DNA of 64,000 nucleotides from Pelomyxa schiedti. Lineage: Eukaryota > Protista > Evosea. The notes below the pieces were generated by a model, which worked only from the letters and a program-made list of their open reading frames with translations, searched no databases and was not told the origin of the DNA. Below are positions 8,813-42,381 of this stretch, piece by piece (within the stretch, counting starts at the first letter, position 1; each line of letters starts with the position of its first letter). The stretch lies in assembly GCA_020536535.1 (NCBI GenBank), contig JAHLWZ010000870.1, forward strand, positions 1,156 through 65,155, read 5' to 3'. The translations under genes and the position numbers were made by a program.

Positions 8813-10087
8813 ATGTGTATTTGTGATCCGGCGTATAAGGATGGCTATGCTGCTGTTGATTGGATTATGACTGCGTTCCATGACTGCGTCTACACCCCAA
8901 TGGACGAGGCGGCTTTCTTTTTTGGTCTGGCCAACATTGGATTCTGGTTGTTTGCTCAAGTACTTTCCGACTTCACTCTAAATGTGTTTACTTCTGAATA
9001 AAATTTGCCCATTACTCGTTTTTGTTGTCTGATATGGATAGGTTCTTCCCGCTTCTAAAAATTGTTTACTTGTAGATACCACAAATCATAAGAACTTTCA
9101 TGGTGAGCAGTGCTGAGGCTATCTCTTTCATTTTCATTTTCACTTGGTTGACTGGAGATATCACAAACCTTCTTGGATGTGTCCTGACTCAACAATTACC
9201 AACGCAGACCTACACTGCAGTTTACTTCTGCATTGTGGATAGCATCATGATGTCACAATGGACCTTCTATAACATCCGTGACTGGAGAAGAAAGAAAAAA
9301 GCTGCTGCAGCTGGAAACGATGGCAAAGGAGGCGACCCCCCAAAACCTGAACCAACACAAAAAACCCCACTCCTCCTGATCCTACTATTTGGCATGGTTG
9401 GTCTGAGAATTGTCTCCTCAATCGCACTCTCTCCGCATTCTCTAGCAACAGCAACAGCAACAACCACATCATTCATTTCCCACACACAACCAGTAGTGCA
9501 TCAAACCAGAACAATTCTCGGACTGGAATTTGGTGCAGCTGCCAGTGGCGTAAGTTCAACTTTGCAATCCGCATTATCAAGCATTTTCAGCAATAGCAGC
9601 AGCACTGCAGAAGACATCTGCAATGAGGACGTCACTCTCGGTCTCACACGCCGCATCCTTGGGGACATTTGCGCCTGGACTTCTGGATGCTTGTACTTCT
9701 TTGGGCGTATTCCTCAGATTTACCATAACTGGAGGCGGAAGAGCGTGGAGGGGCTGTCCCCGTTTATGTTCGCTACTGCGGCTTCGGCAAATATGTGTTA
9801 TGGATTGTCAATCGTACTCATGAAGATGGATTGGACCTCTGCCGAGTTTTGGGAGAATGTTTTCCCGTATGTAACAAAACAAATACTAGATAGCAATGAA
9901 GATATAAAAAATAAATAGTGGAACAAAATGTGGCGAGAATTACTTTCTAACCAAAACAACTAGATACATCCTTGGGAGCTGGTTCACAATGATTTGGCAA
10001 TTGGTGGTTCTCTGCCAGTATATCTACTACAGTGTATGGCTGAAACGCCGCAAATACAAACAACTCCAAGTAAATCCAGATTGCTAA
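8813..10087 (+). CDS. PQ-loop lysosomal/vacuolar cationic amino-acid transporter (PQLC2/Ypq family)
   Basis: Two PQ repeats: FWLFAQ-IPQIIRTF..SAEAIS..FIFTWLTGDITNLLGC..QQLPTQ and YFFGRIPQIYHNWRRKSVEGLSPFMF. Last exon YILGS..QYIYY. Confidence 0.9.
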
Positions 10088-17520: not shown

Positions 17521-20500
17521 TTACAGTGTTTGTAACATAATCCAAGAGACGGTTGGTTTATCCAAGTCTCTTCCATACCACTGATACTGATAAATTGGTT
17601 CCCTATGTGACCTTGGCTTCTGTGCCGTTTTAGGGTCCTTTGCCACAACCCTAACAAGCAGCCTCCTTCTCAAAACAGGTTGTTCTTGCTGCACCTGATA
17701 AGCAATATTCAGCTTTGGAAGACTGAGGTCAGGCCTCCACTGAACAAGCATGTCACAAGGGAAAAGTGATGCCATTGTGCGCTCTAGCTGAAAAGGAGGC
17801 TCTGTGACCCTAATGGCACTTTTGGGAAAATCCGGGTTGATGTTGAAGCTGACTGAGGAAACTATCTGGCCGGAATAAGGACCCCGTCCCACAACGCTGA
17901 GGAACGCGGTGATTGCATACCGGCCTACGTCGTCGGCCCGCTTTGCGGTGTTACCGAATTCCAGAATCAGGTGGAATTCGCCGGGAAGAAGCGGCCGTGG
18001 AAGGGGTACTTTTGTAATTGTGGTCGTGCTAGTGCTTGGTGTAGAATTCGTAGTTGAAGATGATGTTGTGGTTGTGGGATTGTTTGATGTTGAAGGTGAG
18101 GGAGCTTCCAGAGACTGAATGTGAGGTTGGGGACAGAGGGCAACGGGACAGTCCTTTGGATTTATTCCGAGGGACCACAGGCCGCACTTTGCACATAGTA
18201 AGTGCCGGCAGGGGCTAAGTCTGAGCCAAGGGGAAAATTCCACTGGGCTGATGGCTGTGGTTGTGGGGGATTGTGTGTTTTTCTTGGGTGGAATTCTTTG
18301 TTCTGTGGGAATTCCAGTCCGCTTTGGTGGATTCGTTACGGGTTTGGAAGTTGAAGTGGTGGTAGTGCCAGATTTTAAAGGTGGAGCTGTAGGCTTGTAA
18401 GTTGGTATTGGGTTCCTGGACGATTCAGTGTTGGTTGTTTGGGAAATGTATCCTGGTAATCGGGCAGCGATTTCCTTTCCACAAGCGTGGCAATGAGTTT
18501 CTGCAGCTTCAGCAACGAGTCTATTTTCTCTCACTTCTTCACTCTCTACGTCTTCCTTTGTTTCCTCCTCAGCAAACAGGTCAACTTCCCTGCATTTCCG
18601 CAATTCCTCAGCTGCAGCTCTTTCACATTCAACTTGAAATTGGAATGCACTACAATCCGGAGCATTAAGCCCGGATTTTCCTTCTTGAATCGGAGCCCAT
18701 TGGTCATTATACGGCCACTCTCGGTCGAACGGTGTCATCCACGCCAGTATACCACCACAATCTTGCACAGTAGCAGGTAAAGTGGCTTGTTCAGAGAAAG
18801 AACAACTATCGTGTTCCTGAAACATTTGGAGTAGAATTTTCCATAAATTCTGTCCGTTCCAGTACGGCTCTCGGGATCTTGTATATTCGTAGTAATGGCA
18901 GCAAGGTAAAATCCTTTTTACAACTCTCCCCACGGACACAGGATGGCCGAGATCATCTGTATCATAAACGAGTAAGGTCGGTTGTTGTATTACCGAGAAT
19001 CTCTTTGGATCATGTGTGACAGGGTCCATACCAGCAAGATACTTGGTTATGGCAGGGAACTCTACTACAGCGTTGAAAGAAGAAGCCGTTCCCTGTGATG
19101 AACCCATCAGCAGGTGCGCTTTTTTGTGTCCTGTGGCCGCAAGACATTCGGTAAGAAATAATCCAGGATAAGATCGTATCGTTTGTCTATTTCCTGGTGA
19201 CCTCCCATAACCGGGGCAGTCTATCTGTACAATGCAAAAAGGTAAAGTTTTTCTGTATGCCTCCAGGAGCTGAAGTGAAAGTTGGTTCCACCAAATTGAC
19301 GAATTTTCAGGCCCGGATCCATGAATGAAAAGAAGTACCGGATTTGCAAGGTCCCCTGCCACTCGGGCAAAAACTTTCCCGTAAGACGATGTGGAAATCC
19401 AGCATGTTCTTCTCCTCCAAGCTACCTCTGGGTCAGGATAGTCTCCAGAGACTTGACCAACATCAAGCTCCTCCACTCGCTCAATGGAAGTGAGTGAGGT
19501 TACGTTTTTTATTGCTTTTGCAGCTGAAGCTCTTAGCAATGTACTATACGTCTCAGCGGTATTCTCTATGGCCGGACTAACATGCGCAAAGAAAATTGTG
19601 TGGGAGGAACCCCCCAGTGAATCTTGCAGGAGCCTAGTAAGCACAGAGTCCCGGTATGGAATGAAAGATTCACCCTTGACAATTGAGTCAATGACTCTGT
19701 GCAGAACAAGAAGATCGGAGTTTATCTGCACCGCTTGCGTGAAAGTAACGCCGGTGGCATGCGACCTATTTACATCCTCACTTCCTGCCAAATCCACCAG
19801 ATTGATCTTGCTGATGAAGCACTTAACCCTCCCTTTTACTCGGCGTGGGTCATTGCTTCCGTCCGTAGCAGCGACGGGAATTGGTACTCGCTTCTCCACA
19901 TGAAGAGTGAAAATGGCGTGAGAGCGTGAGCTGTATTCGTTCAAATCAGTTGATGCCGTGGCTCTCTGTTTCACTCCTTTGGAAATAGCATCCAGAACTT
20001 GCTCAGATGTCTCCACAACAATCTCAGTTGCTCCAACAATCTTTACTGCATTCCCAGAAGTCGCACTAGCACCAGATTCGTGATCCGCGCAAATCTTGAG
20101 CTTGGAACGGGATTCCTTTCGCGACAAGAGATCAAACACTTGTCCGTTGTAAATCTCCACAAAGCTGGCTCTGACCTGAAACTGCACATTGACATTAGCG
20201 GCAGCACTAGCAGATTTTGACCCGGTCCCAGTCTCAGGTACATGCGAACTAGATTGGGCTAGTGTAGATTCGTGAATGAGAGAAAAAAGTAGCCTGGCGG
20301 AGCGCGGAATCACTCCCATCATTGCGGGATGCAGGCTCAGGGTGCCACCGGGGCCCAGCATCGTGTGAGTTTTCCCGCTGGCGGTTTGCCCATAAGCGAA
20401 TAACGTCGCGTTGTAGCCTTCGACTGCACGGCGGACGAGGTGAGCCACGTGAGAAAACACAACAGACTGAGTGGCCTCGGGCCCAAAGGCTCGATCGAAA

Positions 20501-20688
20501 GTCCATTCAAACGACGATGAAGACGTTGAGGAGGAGTGAGTTGTGAGGGAGGGCCTGAGGCCCGGGGCGCTGAGAGTCACAGTGTTGGACGACGGCTCTA
20601 CTACAATTGTGGGAGGGCCCACACTGCCCTCCGCGAGTGGTCTCACCCTCACAAAACACTCTACACTGCAAACGTTCCCTTGCTTCAT
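17521..20688 (-). CDS. Kinesin motor fused to alpha/beta-hydrolase, RING-like and YEATS-like domains; intronless
   Basis: Single ~1055-aa ORF. Kinesin: GQTASGKT, NEYSSRSH, DLAGSE, IPYRDSVLTRLLQDSLGG. Hydrolase: LFIHGS, IDCPGYGRS, GSSQG. RING-like: CHAC...CRHLLCAKC..CPVALC. YEATS-like: VSSVSFNINPDFPKSAIRVTEPPFQL. First ATG is at 20688. Confidence 0.9.
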   Translation of the reverse strand: MKQGNVCSVECFVRVRPLAEGSVGPPTIVVEPSSNTVTLSAPGLRPSLTTHSSSTSSSSFEWTFDRAFGPEATQSVVFSHVAHLVRRAVEGYNATLFAYGQTASGKTHTMLGPGGTLSLHPAMMGVIPRSARLLFSLIHESTLAQSSSHVPETGTGSKSASAAANVNVQFQVRASFVEIYNGQVFDLLSRKESRSKLKICADHESGASATSGNAVKIVGATEIVVETSEQVLDAISKGVKQRATASTDLNEYSSRSHAIFTLHVEKRVPIPVAATDGSNDPRRVKGRVKCFISKINLVDLAGSEDVNRSHATGVTFTQAVQINSDLLVLHRVIDSIVKGESFIPYRDSVLTRLLQDSLGGSSHTIFFAHVSPAIENTAETYSTLLRASAAKAIKNVTSLTSIERVEELDVGQVSGDYPDPEVAWRRRTCWISTSSYGKVFARVAGDLANPVLLFIHGSGPENSSIWWNQLSLQLLEAYRKTLPFCIVQIDCPGYGRSPGNRQTIRSYPGLFLTECLAATGHKKAHLLMGSSQGTASSFNAVVEFPAITKYLAGMDPVTHDPKRFSVIQQPTLLVYDTDDLGHPVSVGRVVKRILPCCHYYEYTRSREPYWNGQNLWKILLQMFQEHDSCSFSEQATLPATVQDCGGILAWMTPFDREWPYNDQWAPIQEGKSGLNAPDCSAFQFQVECERAAAEELRKCREVDLFAEEETKEDVESEEVRENRLVAEAAETHCHACGKEIAARLPGYISQTTNTESSRNPIPTYKPTAPPLKSGTTTTSTSKPVTNPPKRTGIPTEQRIPPKKNTQSPTTTAISPVEFSPWLRLSPCRHLLCAKCGLWSLGINPKDCPVALCPQPHIQSLEAPSPSTSNNPTTTTSSSTTNSTPSTSTTTITKVPLPRPLLPGEFHLILEFGNTAKRADDVGRYAITAFLSVVGRGPYSGQIVSSVSFNINPDFPKSAIRVTEPPFQLERTMASLFPCDMLVQWRPDLSLPKLNIAYQVQQEQPVLRRRLLVRVVAKDPKTAQKPRSHREPIYQYQWYGRDLDKPTVSWIMLQTL

Positions 20689-20754
20689 TTGCACCGTTTT
20701 TTCGTTCTTGCATCTGTTCGCCGAAATGATTAGAAACCGTTTTTTTTTGTGGCA

Positions 20755-35753: not shown

Positions 35754-36868
35754 TTAAGAAATCAAACACCAAGAAGGGGTAGGTGGTGGTTTTTGTTCTT
35801 CTGTGCCCAGAACGCGGTAATGCTTTTTAGCAAGAGCCATCCAAAATTTTGGTACCATGTCACATACCGATTTGTAGTCATCTGAAGGCTTGGAAACAAT
35901 TCGGAGCTCAAATGGGGCATTCCCCATCAGCACTGCAATATCATCACTCCAGGAGAATAAGCACGCACCGGTCCAGGATTCATAGGAATTGAGTTCTATA
36001 ACCTTAATGTGGGGAGTTTGGCCCTGGTCAAAGGCATCCACATCCACAAAAAGGTCAACAATGTAGGTATCTATGTGAGAGAGTCGGTTCTTCAACTCAG
36101 AGTCAAAGAATGAGTGGAATAGATTGCAGAGGTCGGCGTGGTGCTTTGCAATCTGAGGGTAGTAGCACAAGTGGTCATACTGGCTTACAGCTGTGAGCTT
36201 ATTCCCTTTGACCCAAGCCCGGAATTCGTAGTGTTGCTTTTTACAAATTTCGTGGTCCCATTGGCGGAGTGCTATGCAGGTTCTGACATACGGAAAGAGA
36301 GTTTGAATGCTATTCAAATCCTCGCGCACGCGCCAACTTTTGCACAACAATTTGAGAACATCAGTTCCATTCCTTACGGCCAGTCTCTCCTGCAAAGCGC
36401 GCATTAAGCCATTGAGTACATCTTGCGGAGTTACAATTGGAAGAGAGGAGGGGTCAGTCGGAATTGGCTCTTGCGGTACTTGCCTTTCCGTTTGTGTCGA
36501 GTATTCCAGGATGAATTTGATTACATCTTCTTGAAGCTCTGGATCAGAAGTGTTTGACACAATAGCATCCTTTGGGCTTCTGCTGTCCAGCTTAACAAAT
36601 GCAACCCTTTCGGAGGCCAGAGCTCTGTTCACCGCCTCGTCCCCTCCCTTCCCGGAAGCAGAACCCTTCACCGAATCCGAACCCGGATCATACAGCTCCC
36701 TCAGCGCCGAGTCAATTCTCCCAGCCAACGCCACCAAAGTGGCCAAATGCACTTCCTCAGTCCCAGAACAACTCGCGTTCTCCCGCGTCGACGACGACAC
36801 TGACGATGACGCCCCAGAAGACGTTGCCGTTGTTATTGATGAAGAAGAAGAAGATGATGATGAGGACG

Positions 36869-36933
<65 letters not shown>

Positions 36934-37528
36934 GAGCTCGCTGTTGCCGCATTCGTGGCATCGCAACTGGAAGAAGGAGAAGGGGGAGGGGGAGGGGGCG
37001 AAGCGGCAGGCGGGGCGGCTGCGAGGCGCGAGAGCAGGGGGGACTCGGCCGGGGACGCCGCGAGGATGCAGCCCATGTCGGGCTCGTCGAGCCACACGAA
37101 CCGCGAGNNNNNNNNNNNNNNNNNNNNNNNNNNNNNNNNNNNNNNNNNNNNNNNNNNNNNNNNNNNNNNNNNNNNNNNNNNNNNNNNNNNNNNNNNNNNN
37201 NNNNNNNAGGGGGAGGGGGCGAAGCGGCAGGCGGGGCGGCTGCGAGGCGCGAGAGCAGGGGGGACTCGGCCGGGGACGCCGCGAGGATGCAGCCCATGTC
37301 GGGCTCGTCGAGCCACACGAACCGCGAGGGCGTGGTCACCCCGCGGAGGTGGGGGTCGACCGACGAGACGGAGAAGGCCAGGCGGTACCTCTGCTGCACG
37401 TAGTGTCCCATAAGCGAGTCCGGCACCCCCGCCGCCTTGCCCGCGTCCACCAGCCCGCTGATCAGCGGGTGCGTGAATTGAGCCTGTGGCCGTCTGGTCG
37501 TCGGCTGCTCTCGTGTTTCGGTTGACAT
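35754..37528 (-). CDS. CDC123/R2K-clade ATP-grasp protein; intronless once the gap overlap is collapsed; C-terminal CLIS
   Basis: FVKLDSRSPKDA, LRQW, EFRAWVKGNKLTAVSQY, YIVDL, VIELN and GACLFSW are D123/R2K motifs. Start is MSTETREQ at 37528. Confidence 0.8.
36868..36933. repeat. (GTT)22 trinucleotide repeat encoding poly-Thr in the CDC123-like gene
   Basis: Perfect run read directly. Confidence 0.95.
37108..37207. other. Scaffold gap (100 N) flanked by a duplicated 121-bp overlap
   Basis: 36987-37107 is identical to 37208-37328. Confidence 0.95.
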
Positions 37529-38073
37529 GGTTTTTGTTTGTTCGAAAAATGAACATTTCAGTTTCCACAAAAAGATTAATACACCGATTTGATGAACCAA
37601 CAGTACGAGAACGAGGAGTCAGAACAAGGCGTTGGGGCACGTGACCTGTGCGGGAGGCTCGTGGATTCCGCCATGGGGGAAGCCTGGGTGACGTGACGTG
37701 CTTTGTCTCAGTTTTGCTGCTATCTCTCAGAAGTTCTGTGGAGTGCTTCAGTTCCCCCAAGTTAAATATCAGCTGGTGACACAGTTCCATCTTCTGGCGG
37801 AACACCCCAATTTGAACAAGAATTTGGTGCTCTACGATGAACAAAATTGAATTTTGGATCGTCAATGGCTTTGTTCAAGTATTCCCATCTCTCTTCATAA
37901 TTCCTTCCTTCTCTCTCCACCAATATCCTTTTAGCTGGAATGTAACTTTATTTACAATGTAAACTAAAGTCCGTGGTAAACTCGCCAAAAACAACGTTCG
38001 AAAAAATCTGCACGCCTTCCACTGCGGCAGCAAATTGGTGTTTTTTTTGTGGTAATGTGATGAAGGCAATAGA

Positions 38074-41000
38074 TTAGGGTGACTTTGTGGCCTGAATGAA
38101 GGAATTTGCGGCATCGAGGATGTGTTGCCTCTTGGAGGGGACGTCAGTTAGGGAAGATGATGATAGTACTGTGCCTATCCATCGCTGGGCTTTGTTGGAG
38201 AGGAGAAGCCACTGCGTTTGCTGAAGTGGGAAGCGCTGCGCGAAGATAGATATGGCTGTGGCGGTGGCCCATACTTCCTTGGCAAGAGAGGGGTCCGGAA
38301 CCCACTCGCTGAGTTGCGGTGGGATGGATTTGTAGAAGTTGTCCATGTCTAGTTGCAGCACCTGGCCAAACTGCGCCGAGGGTATCCATGACCCATTGGC
38401 AGTTTGCAATAATATCTTTTTGTTTGTTGTTAGTGCGGTTTATTTAAGGTGTTTTTAATGGAGTGCATAGAGTACCAACTGCTCAAGGGGCCCAGAGTGC
38501 GCCAATGAGGTCACTTTGGGGGTTACAGAACTCAAGGGCTTCACGGATGTTATACTCGGAGGAGGGATATGTGGTGCTGAGGGAACAACAGATGCTGGCG
38601 GGACTTCGGAGGTGGGGAGATTCGAGCGCAAGTTTACACCCGTTTTAACCACTGATCCACTCATGATGTCAGCAAGAGAAGTCTTCCCAACACCCATATT
38701 CCCCAAGAAAATCACTGCACGTATTTCATTTTGAATAAATGGAGATTGACAGAACCTTTCAGATCAGAACCCGGATACTCAGACGAAAAGTCTACAAGAA
38801 TTTAGTTGTAATTAGATAAATGAAGCTTACTGGGAAAAAAGGCCTGTATAGCCTCTTTTAGGTTACTCAAAGTTTTGACGGACACCTCAAATATCAGAGC
38901 TTTGTACTTTTCACTTAGAGTTGCAGCTTCTTGATGGGAAACCTATAAAAAAGTAAGGTAACCAATCCAATAGTGTCGTGTTAAGAAAACCTCTCGGTTG
39001 CCAATGAGGTCTAGTTTATTCCCAAGAATAAGGAATGACACCTTTGTTTGCACTGTGGACATCACACTCTTTATCCACAATTCAGCTGCAGTAAAGCTCT
39101 CTCTAGAGGTAATGGAATACCTTTAAAACAGAATTACCTACAGGTTTCGCAAGTATATGGGATAAAACATGACTATGGCCCCCTGTGCTCCCTGAGATAA
39201 TGTGAAAAATATTGAACAACTGTGGAGCAAAGAGGAATTACCCTGTAGTACATTGGAGCCAGTGCCCCATAGCGCTCTGTGGAAGGAAAGTGAGTACCCC
39301 GCAAAGGAGTTCTAAATACCTTGGCCTGCAGTATCCCATAGTTGTACAGTACGGTCAATTCCATTAGACTGCAAGTTCATGGTATGGAAGTTGGCCCCAA
39401 CAGTACACTTACAGCTTTCAGCAAATGTCCTCCTTCCGAATTGGACTGACACGTCAGAGTTTTGTGCTACCTCCTCAGGTTGTATTGAACTTGGAACACT
39501 GGGTGATCGCGAGAAAAGCGAAAATGAAGGAAAGGATGGCAGCATGTTCCGTAACGAGTCAAAGAAGGAGCCACCAGAGTATCTTGAGGCAGAGGCAAGT
39601 TCTGATGTACCCATGCTTACATTGCACGCTGCTGCTGAAACGTGGCCATTTAAACATTCAATCGCTGCGGACTGCTCCTGGACCATGCTATTCATGTCTT
39701 GCATGGCTTGTTGTAAAGTTTCAATGTCCTCTTTTTTTTCGTTTGAGTGATAGTGGAGCTTGAATGAAGATACTCTGTAAGCTCTCAATACTCTCGTCTT
39801 CCGTTGGTGGGGACTTCACTGCATTACATGCAACCAAGTTCATGGAACCTGTAGAAATCACACATGACATACAAAAGAATAGGAAAACCTGAGACTGGTG
39901 TTTCTTGTTTCTGTACAGCAACAAAGCTTGTTTCAGAACTCAGTAAACTGTATCTAGGAATAATAGTGATACCAAAAAGAGAATGTAAGGCTCCAACCTT
40001 AGAGCAATTTGAGTTATTTCCTCGGAATTACGGGGAGATGCCAATTCAAGAGCTCTGGAAAGGATAATGAAATTACAAAGAAAGTTAGCAGAATTATACT
40101 TTATTCTCGATTTTGCAGCAAGGCGGGCAACCACATGCTCATCTTGCGCCGGGTGTGTGCCCAACCTTCAAAGACAATAAAAATTGATGGAATAAGGGGA
40201 TATGGGACATGCGTGATCTTGTGATCGTAAGAGCGAGAGTGGGCACTTGTGGTGTGCACCCTGACAACAACTGTATCTGGTACTGTGGCACCAGTGGGAA
40301 ATATCCCATAGCCTTTCTCCCATAAGATTTTGTTTCCATATCTAGAAGAAATACATATAACAAGGTCTCCATAGGAAGAAGCCATTTCTTCTGGTACCTG
40401 GATGACACCTGGGACCCCCCAAAGTATTTCCACTTTGATAATCATCGGCTATGAGAGTGTGTCAAGGTGGTGCTGGACAAAGTCAATGAAACCTGCAAGC
40501 AAAACTTCAACTGGAGCATAACTTTCTCTTCAATCACTTCTTCAGATGACACAAATTCTGCCTGGGCCGGCAAATGGTAAGGTACACCCAAACCAAAATG
40601 AAACCTTTCCATGTCCAATACTGGCCAAACCTAAGTTTTTCAATGGTCAAAAATCTGAAAACACAATAGAAATTCACAACCAGTCATCAGAGTGGCACTG
40701 GCATCAGCCCCAATGCCGAAGGTGAATATTCGGCTGTCTCCTTCAATGTTGTGAGAAGAGTAAAGATTCTTACTACACACCACAATGTTGATAAGCATAG
40801 TGAAGTAATTCACTCTCAGGGCACTCTCCATCTGTCTAACCAACGAATTAAAAATACTCAACCTAAAAGAGAGAAGACCAAGACAAAAATTTGACGAGGG
40901 AAAGTTGGGTGACGCTTTGATCCAAAAATAAACTTAAGAGGTGACAAAAGGTCTGTACCACCCATGTCAGCACTCATGCTGTCAATGTGAGAACATGCTT

Positions 41001-42381
41001 TAGCAAAACTTTTTTTTTTTTTGATCAGTAGGGTGCTGGTGAATTCATCAACTTTGTATCATTATATCTCTGAGAATCCGAGAATAGAGGTTTATACTGT
41101 GACCCAAATCCAATAACTATTAAAAATGGGAAAAACTTAGGCTAAATCTGAGCCTACCATTAAAAAGAGAGCCAACTGGCAAACTCCGTAAAAAAATTTG
41201 CAGGGCATTTTTGGCTTGGTTCATCCTAAAAGAAAGGTTATTGTATCCTTTAGGTAGAGGATTACTTAGATCCTGCCATACTTCCACTCTGATCCACAAT
41301 AAATACGATTTCACTCAGAGATTCATCATCAAGACTTCCTTCAATGTCATGCAAAAAATGAACAACAGCAGTGTGGTTCCCATCAGGGTCCTGAAAGTGA
41401 TCATTACGTATTTCCACAAAAAAACATAGACATACTATTTCCAGAAAAGCAGATGAAGGCACATCCATATGTGCAAAAAGAGCCAAATACTTTTTTAACT
41501 TGGCTAATGTGAGATTCTACGAATTATGGCTTCTGAAGAAACGACCTTATTACAACTAAAGGAGACCCTAGCAGAATTTCCCGAAATGGAGGGTATAACA
41601 GAAATGTCTTGATTAAATGTAATTGCCTGGATACTGGTTGCCATATTCAGTCTTATATCAGCAGAGAACCTTGCAGTGGGCCCCTAGGTAGTGTGAAAGG
41701 GATGCAGGGAGTAAGGTGAAAACAGGAAGTTTGTGTGTCCAAGGAAAGACGAGTTTCATTCTGCCACCAGCTGCTTGTAGTTCAGTGACATATTTGAACC
41801 ACACTTTGCAGCTAGATCCTGCTGGAAACCTGCCAATGCTGAGGCTGATAACACCCTGTTATTTAATGAGACAGCACTTCTCTTGTCTTGTAAAAGAGAA
41901 ATACATTGGTACTCTGTTCCATTAACACAGCTGTATGCCCAGCAGAAACAGCATCATCATATGTGTTTACTGCCTAATTTGAAATAGTTAAAAAAAAAAT
42001 AGAATGGAAGACTTCAAATGCAAACTTTTTCCCGAGCCTTGCACTGTGCCACAATTATGGGCTGATCAGCAACTTGCACTTCCACATGATACAGTGCACT
42101 TCGAGACTCCTGCCAAAATTGATACCTGTTTGACAGAAAGCGCCAATTCAGAAAGTCAAACCCAAAAAAAAGCCCCTCGCTCACTTGGCTTCAATGTCCA
42201 ACGCCGTGTCATTTACGAAACGTTGCTCCACACAGCACAACGCCGTAGCTCCCCTAATTTCACAAACAAGGCTCGACTCGGCCAACGGGAAAAACGAACG
42301 TTGGTTGGTGTTAGATCTCAGACCAGACACTTCCAACGGCAGATCCGTGTCGTACGCCTCGGAACCCTGCCTGCCAAACAT
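38074..42381 (-). CDS. VWA5A-like protein (VIT + vWA + C-terminal domain) with inserted SNARE motif and circularly permuted Rab-like GTPase
   Basis: VIT-like VEQRFVN..DIEAK; MIDAS FIVDQSGSM; QAKNALQIFLRSLP; RIFTFGIG. Then a SNARE heptad, [14 protein letters not shown] and GNMGVGKTS. C-terminal LQTANGSW..VWATA..QWLLLSNKAQRWI is typical of VWA5A. Confidence 0.85.

What the first reader, a model, noticed from the sequence alone, without database searches (positions are those of the whole stretch)
38656..39446. Circularly permuted Rab5-like GTPase with motif order G2-G3-G4-G5-G1
Seen: removing 6 short GT-AG introns gives VQFGRRTFAESCKCTVGANFHTMNL(G2)..[33 protein letters not shown](G3)..LILGNKLD(G4)..FEVSVK(G5)TLSNLKEAIQAFF-PNFSSEYPGSD-LKVIFLGNMGVGKTSLADIMSG. 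The beta1 strand and P-loop (38677-38703) come after helix alpha5, joined by a linker of about 11 aa. No P-loop precedes G2; the upstream sequence is S/P-rich. Known: LAPMYYRGA is a Rab5/Rab22-type signature. The permuted GTPases I know of (YlqF/YawG/RbgA family and cpRAS) have the order G4-G5-G1-G2-G3. Inference: this is a different permutation, with the chain break in helix alpha1 just before switch I. G1, the switch-I Thr, the catalytic Gln and NKxD are all intact, so it may be a functional GTPase whose switch I is tethered directly to the upstream SNARE linker.
Basis: partly seen in the sequence, partly recalled or inferred. Interest (0 to 1): 0.93.

Follow-up and report, generated by a model that had tools for sequence, protein, structure and literature searches.

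The report
Rab switch with P-loop moved last
An expressed gene of the amoeba Pelomyxa schiedti contains a Rab5-like molecular switch whose phosphate-binding loop sits at the end of the domain instead of the start, an arrangement shared by two sister genes and four environmental sequences and not found in the papers searched; whether it still binds GTP is untested.

Summary
Confirmed. The minus-strand gene (Pelomyxa schiedti KAH3745480.1, 1026 aa: VIT, vWA, Qa-SNARE motif, G-domain, C-terminal domain) carries a Rab5-like domain in the order G2-G3-G4-G5-G1. One spliced RNA contig covers all six introns in that order, and there is no upstream P-loop. Two Pelomyxa paralogues have the same order and the same 122-aa spacing from G3 to G1. 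Four intron-free metagenome contigs carry a Rab1-like version on the CPRas zinc-finger/vWA scaffold. AlphaFold places the C-terminal strand and P-loop where YlqF/RsgA have them. This appears to be a third natural permutation of the G-domain. Most likely it folds and binds GTP, perhaps with fast exchange because switch I has lost its alpha1 anchor (inferred, not tested). The scan noted this order before on three other pieces of this genome; the metagenome family, the fold tests and the cut site were worked out here.

The parts
38074..42381 (-). Host gene, vWA5A/PARP4-type VIT-vWA protein of 1026 aa (P0001 = KAH3745480.1, Pelomyxa schiedti)
   Evidence: RNA covers only the 3' part, about 38014-40570
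41790..42276 (-). VIT domain (aa 36-144)
   Evidence: PF08487 E 5e-21; mapping; no RNA cover here
40553..41312 (-). vWA domain (aa 260-412) with MIDAS-like residues (DxSxS at 266, Thr near 337, Asp near 364)
   Evidence: PF13768 E 3e-30; motif positions
39579..39798 (-). Qa-type SNARE motif (aa 577-635), no transmembrane anchor; split by intron 39773-39731
   Evidence: syntaxin-17 E 1.2e-6, syntaxin-7 E 1.5e-3; Pfam does not detect it
39435..39578 (-). S/P-rich linker (aa 636-683) between SNARE motif and switch I; holds no P-loop
39339..39434 (-). New start of the G-domain: guanine-stacking Phe687, switch I with G2 Thr694, strands beta2-beta3
   Evidence: switch I has low pLDDT
39275..39335 (-). 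G3 (DTAGQE, catalytic Gln intact), split by intron 39319-39277
39009..39020 (-). G4 (NKLD)
38874..38882 (-). G5, SVK (Val at the position of Ras Ala146)
38763..38861 (-). Helix alpha5 and the short loop that joins it to beta1 (permutation junction); includes intron 38830-38792
38680..38762 (-). Strand beta1 (split by intron 38755-38715) and P-loop G1 (GNMGVGKT, 38703-38680)
38656..38685 (-). Helix alpha1, new end of the G-domain
   Evidence: model helix 173-180 = aa 844-851, pLDDT about 92
38479..38655 (-). S/P-rich linker (aa 854-912); no second G2 or G3 follows the P-loop
38077..38478 (-). C-terminal domain (aa 913-1026) of the vWA5A-like type; intron 38475-38416
   Evidence: RNA joint; paralogous tail elsewhere in the genome; no Pfam hit; family assignment partly from own knowledge and PMC10539598

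Best explanation
A true circular permutation of a Rab5-like G-domain, opened in the loop between helix alpha1 and switch I and closed by a short alpha5-to-beta1 loop, inserted in the low-complexity region of a cytosolic VIT-vWA scaffold. SHOWN: motif order, splicing, seven natural copies. PREDICTED: the C-terminal beta1, P-loop and alpha1 complete a normal GTP pocket. INFERRED: it binds and probably hydrolyses GTP; because switch I no longer hangs from alpha1, and G5 has Val for Ala, nucleotide exchange should be faster and need less help from an exchange factor, so it would be mostly GTP-loaded. Both new chain ends lie at the nucleotide-sensing face, so the domain can act as a built-in switch or as an unprenylated Rab5 mimic next to a soluble SNARE motif. 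Likely origin (inferred): tandem Rab-Rab duplication with loss of the outer halves, then copying among scaffold proteins.
For: RNA joints on one contig. Single G1 hit, downstream only. Paralogue P0007 (PARP-VIT-vWA, 38-41% identical in the domain) and L074: all three have 122 aa from the G3 Trp to the first G1 Gly and share introns at R[EQ]^VS and K^V; two share the alpha5-end intron. Four metagenome contigs have the same order at 126-128 aa. Gly, Gly-Lys of G1 invariant in the six aligned copies and present in L074. AlphaFold: pLDDT 85, pTM 0.83, beta1/P-loop/alpha1 above 90; aligns to Rabs over 9-159 (Z 14.7, rmsd 2.5) and to permuted YlqF (49-186, Z 9.8, rmsd 3.1), RsgA (63-186, Z 9.4, rmsd 2.4) and YjeQ. 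A control with only natural permuted rows gives the same YlqF match (Z 9.0, rmsd 3.0). A natural tandem Rab-Rab protein exists (P0006).
Against: No biochemistry. The good model used canonical Rab pieces split into two rows, which favours the Ras fold; the unbiased control is weaker (pLDDT 65, pTM 0.68). Switch I is unresolved in both models. The domain is on a long branch (2.4 changes per site) and deviates at G5. The flanking linkers are long and probably disordered (48 and 59 aa), which weakens any lever action. The RNA comes from one sample, as contigs rather than long reads.
Confidence: 0.7

Rival explanations
1. Folded permuted domain that works mainly as a decoy or binding surface: it mimics Rab5 for exchange factors, effectors or microbial effectors, and nucleotide cycling is weak or irrelevant.
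For: No prenylation site inside the protein; neighbours in the three Pelomyxa genes are bait-like modules: Qa-SNARE, R-SNARE (PF00957 E 1.4e-7) and WH2 (E 9e-4); L074 has Asn for the catalytic Gln; long branches and different Rab signatures among copies.
Against: G1, G2, G3 and G4 residues are kept in all seven copies, which suggests selection on nucleotide binding; six of seven keep the catalytic Gln.
Confidence: 0.17
2. Relic of a tandem Rab-Rab duplication: a P-loop-less pseudo-GTPase followed by a leftover P-loop that does not pack into it.
For: Tandem Rab proteins exist (P0006); the G1 piece is short; Pelomyxa has well over 100 Ras-superfamily matches.
Against: Identical spacing in three paralogues at about 40% identity, exactly complementary pieces with nothing duplicated, four further copies in other samples, and both models place the strand in the sheet.
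Confidence: 0.05
3. The C-terminal beta1/P-loop completes the pocket of a second molecule (domain-swapped dimer), making a GTP-dependent dimeriser.
For: The alpha5-beta1 loop is short; swapped G-domain dimers are reported for Roco proteins (own knowledge).
Against: The monomer model accommodates the loop at pLDDT 81-94, and YRG proteins close the same junction within one chain.
Confidence: 0.06
4. Assembly or gene-model artefact.
For: Single-cell assembly in 5337 scaffolds; the DNA run laid here may be the source of the assembly.
Against: Independent spliced RNA contigs, two paralogues on other contigs, four copies in unrelated samples.
Confidence: 0.01

Closest known systems
cpRAS / CPRas proteins (Elias and Novotny 2008, PMC2430557)
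   Same: Permuted Ras-superfamily domain with alpha5 joined to beta1, inside large vWA proteins of protists. The metagenome copies L045-L048 sit on what looks like the same scaffold (similar N-terminal motif, zinc finger, Sec23-trunk vWA; N-terminal and scaffold likeness to the published sequences judged by eye).
   Different: cpRAS is RAS-family, order G3-G4-G5-G1-G2, cut between beta2 and beta3. Here the domain is Rab-type, G2 comes first, the cut is after alpha1, and the host in this window is VIT-vWA.
YRG / YlqF-YawG-RbgA-RsgA circularly permuted GTPases
   Same: G4-G5-G1 run is continuous and superposes on the model; a switch region is left attached to a neighbouring domain.
   Different: Order G4-G5-G1-G2-G3, ribosome-associated, about 11-20% identity in the structural alignments, often without the catalytic Gln (PMC2848588).
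Rab5 / Rab22 / Rab21 subfamily
   Same: Best solved relatives are Rab5A/B/C; switch II signature; several intron positions lie at or within one base of those in canonical Pelomyxa Rab5/22-like genes.
   Different: Permuted, internal to a 1026-aa protein, no prenylation tail, SVK at G5; orthology not resolved by the tree.
VWA5A / Dictyostelium Vwa1 / PARP4 (VIT-vWA) family (PMC10539598)
   Same: VIT, vWA, variable region and C-terminal domain; cytosolic.
   Different: Carries a SNARE motif and a permuted Rab in the variable region.

Membership tests
cpRAS | Motif order G3-G4-G5-G1-G2 | tested here: not met
   G2 precedes G3 and nothing like switch I follows alpha1
cpRAS | RAS-family domain with TIE-type G2 | tested here: not met
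   Best hits Rab5A; G2 reads TVG(A)NF
cpRAS | Zinc finger plus Sec23-trunk vWA, or alpha-2-macroglobulin-like host | tested here: not met
   Host is VIT-vWA; met for the metagenome relative L047
YRG (YlqF/YawG) | Order G4-G5-G1-G2-G3 | tested here: not met
YRG (YlqF/YawG) | alpha5 joined to beta1, P-loop in the canonical place | tested here: met
   Model-based:
Rab GTPases | G1-G5 motifs and Rab-type switch II sequence | tested here: met
   PF00071 E 2e-38; Rab5A E 6e-30; G5 is SVK
Rab GTPases | Canonical motif order and C-terminal prenylation motif | tested here: not met
Rab5 subfamily | Groups with Rab5 in a tree after re-permutation | tested here: inconclusive
   Long branch, no starred placement; reference set was mostly Rab5/22 and Rab44/46
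Active GTPase | GTP binding and hydrolysis | not testable with these tools
   Residues present; needs biochemistry
VIT-vWA (VWA5A-like) | VIT followed by vWA | tested here: met
Single origin of all G2-G3-G4-G5-G1 domains | Monophyly | tested here: inconclusive
   Not recovered, not rejected: p-AU 0.31 for all seven, 0.41 for the three Pelomyxa copies

The most novel reading that the evidence does not exclude
A third natural topology of the GTPase domain ('cpRab') forms a mobile, exchange-factor-independent GTP switch that protists plug into vWA scaffolds beside trafficking baits, and the CPRas scaffold has accepted three interchangeable forms (cpRAS, cpRab, canonical Rab), so the position of the chain ends tunes how nucleotide state is passed to the host protein.
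Probability: 0.35. Interest if true: 0.88.

Novelty: new variant of a known kind. Interest (0 to 1): 0.78.

Why it matters
Two natural permutations of the G-domain are described in the papers I could search, and a 2006 survey argued that others were unlikely (as reported in PMC2430557; the survey itself was not available). This one cuts between alpha1 and switch I, the link that positions the element reading the gamma-phosphate. A natural, conserved and expressed example makes it directly testable whether switch I needs that anchor for nucleotide binding, exchange and effector recognition. It also gives a handle on the uncharacterised CPRas and VIT-vWA proteins, and shows a class of GTPase that standard annotation reads as a truncated Rab.

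Tried and rejected
Hidden upstream P-loop exon: none in six frames or RNA. A second DNA contig sharing two 19-20 nt words looked like a donor gene; the exact 19-mer match elsewhere in the genome is an ordinary Rab7-like gene, so no close donor was found. Protein searches found only P0007 as a further permuted copy among the listed hits; they are limited by length window and by canonical Rabs filling the lists. Pattern scans of viral contigs and of prokaryote genomes were blank; they need intron-free, exact matches. Atlas searches gave only generic Rab clusters. Ten paper searches found no description of this order; the exact string was never matched, and the Anand 2006 paper was not held. Derivation from cpRAS by a shifted cut was considered: the P-loop segments look Rab-type rather than RAS-type, which argues against it, but 23 residues cannot settle it. 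Two Pelomyxa loci with Rab next to vWA proved not permuted (L019, L075). The tree could not resolve origins. No typed or joined spliced model was sent to any search tool: exons were searched by reference, and later steps used the database protein P0001; spliced models of L074 and canonical Rabs stayed inside scripts.

Full report
Observation. The stretch is part of a minus-strand gene running from 42381 to 38074. My exon model of the C-terminal half equals the database protein. Pfam finds VIT (36-144), vWA (260-412) and a Ras-family domain that lacks the first 13 profile positions (677-818). The missing strand and P-loop follow helix alpha5, at residues 832-845.

Is it real? RNA run X1 has one 1353-nt spliced contig that carries the end of the vWA-side region, the SNARE exon, all six introns of the G-domain and the last exon in this order; runs X2 and X3 confirm the joints on both sides of the P-loop exon; the DNA run spans the locus in one piece. 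Limits: the three RNA runs are one sample, they are contigs, X2 retains some introns, and the 5' half has no cover. A profile of beta1-G1-alpha1 built from canonical Rabs scores the downstream segment 17.8 bits against at most 4.5 in 1000 shuffles, and finds no upstream P-loop. The alignment to Rab5A is crossed.

Where is the cut? In the alignment with split canonical Rabs the C-terminal segment covers beta1, the P-loop and the whole of alpha1, and the N-terminal part begins at the aromatic residue that stacks on guanine (Phe in five of seven copies, Tyr or nearby Phe in the others).

Relatives. P0007, a 1636-aa PARP-VIT-vWA protein of the same genome, ends in the same permuted Rab5-like domain. 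A third gene (contig C1277, locus L074) has a Rab1-like version after an R-SNARE motif, with Asn for the catalytic Gln. All three have 122 residues from the G3 Trp to the first P-loop Gly. They share a phase-0 intron before the G4-G5 helix region and a phase-1 intron after the beta1 Lys, and two share a phase-1 intron at the end of alpha5. Caveat: one canonical gene has an intron one base away from the beta1 position (L013), so that intron is suggestive only. A DNA pattern for G3..G4..G1 found four intron-free metagenome contigs. Each encodes a Rab1-like G2-G3-G4-G5-G1 domain followed by a zinc finger; the longer ones continue into a Sec23-trunk vWA domain. By eye this is the scaffold of the published CPRas proteins. 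Pelomyxa also has this scaffold with a canonical Rab (L075). The organisms behind the four contigs are unknown. After re-permutation the tree is unresolved; a single origin is neither shown nor rejected.

Fold. AlphaFold with six natural permuted rows, one tandem Rab and split canonical rows gave pLDDT 85 and pTM 0.83, with beta1, P-loop and alpha1 above 90 and part of switch I below 50. Sequential structure alignment matches Rabs up to the end of alpha5 and matches the permuted YlqF, RsgA and YjeQ through the C-terminal P-loop and helix, which shows that the model puts this segment in the canonical place. A control from the six natural rows alone is weaker (pLDDT 65) but gives the same YlqF match. 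These are predictions and lean towards a very familiar fold.

How it probably works. Shown: all nucleotide-binding residues except the G5 Ala are present, and the order is conserved across divergent copies. Inferred: the domain binds Mg-GTP like a Rab. From general knowledge of Ras-family proteins, exchange factors act by pulling switch I and its Phe away from the nucleotide, and Ala146Val speeds exchange (A146V is listed as an activating KRAS mutant in PMC10322706; the kinetic effect is from my own knowledge). A switch I without its alpha1 anchor, plus SVK, predicts fast intrinsic exchange and a mostly GTP-bound state. The permutation is not needed merely to insert a G-domain, since the normal termini are already close; what it changes is that both ends now leave from the nucleotide-sensing face. 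That allows nucleotide state to be passed to the host, as proposed for YRG proteins, but the 48- and 59-aa S/P-rich linkers make a rigid lever unlikely. A soluble Rab5 mimic displayed beside a soluble Qa-SNARE motif is the simplest cellular picture; a decoy role is the main rival, since the sister genes pair the domain with an R-SNARE or a WH2 motif.

Comparison and novelty. It works like a Rab and is built like cpRAS and YRG in having alpha5 joined to beta1, but it fails the defining order of both families. Ten searches of the paper library found no G2-G3-G4-G5-G1 GTPase (among them); subscription papers, including the 2006 survey, were not covered. I rate it a new variant of a known kind. 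Earlier notes of this scan report the same order on three other pieces of this genome; I confirmed two paralogues myself before seeing them, and could not check a possible fourth copy or the 'related amoeba' that one note mentions.

Method note. 

Noticed in passing
window 17521-20694 (-): Single 1057-aa open frame joining a kinesin motor (PF00225 E 1e-86), an alpha/beta hydrolase-like region (E 1e-5), a Cys/His-rich stretch and a weak YEATS match (E 6e-4).
   Followed up: partly
window 35754-37600 (-): D123-family (ATP-grasp) gene (PF07065 E 4e-19); an N gap at about 37108-37207 is flanked by two copies of the same roughly 100-nt stretch, probably an assembly artefact.
   Followed up: partly
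window 9100-9918 (+): PQ-loop repeat transporter-like gene (PF04193 E 3e-25).
   Followed up: no
window 39676: RNA contig of run X1 differs by one base, changing Glu603 to Gly next to the central Gln of the SNARE motif; allele or error.
   Followed up: no
L075 (G000:C852): Canonical-order Rab fused to the zinc-finger/vWA body of CPRas proteins.
   Followed up: partly
   Followed up: no
L074 (G000:C1277): R-SNARE motif upstream of a permuted Rab1-like domain with Asn at the catalytic Gln; after alpha1 it shares a short DLS..L..YP motif with the metagenome copies.
   Followed up: partly
L019 (G000:C676): Canonical Rab1-like domain that seems to run straight into a VIT-like region and a vWA match, another Rab-vWA fusion.
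   Followed up: no
P0006: 379-aa metagenome protein of two near-identical tandem Rab domains lacking the G3 Ala-Gly-Gln; the kind of intermediate expected for permutation by duplication.
   Followed up: no
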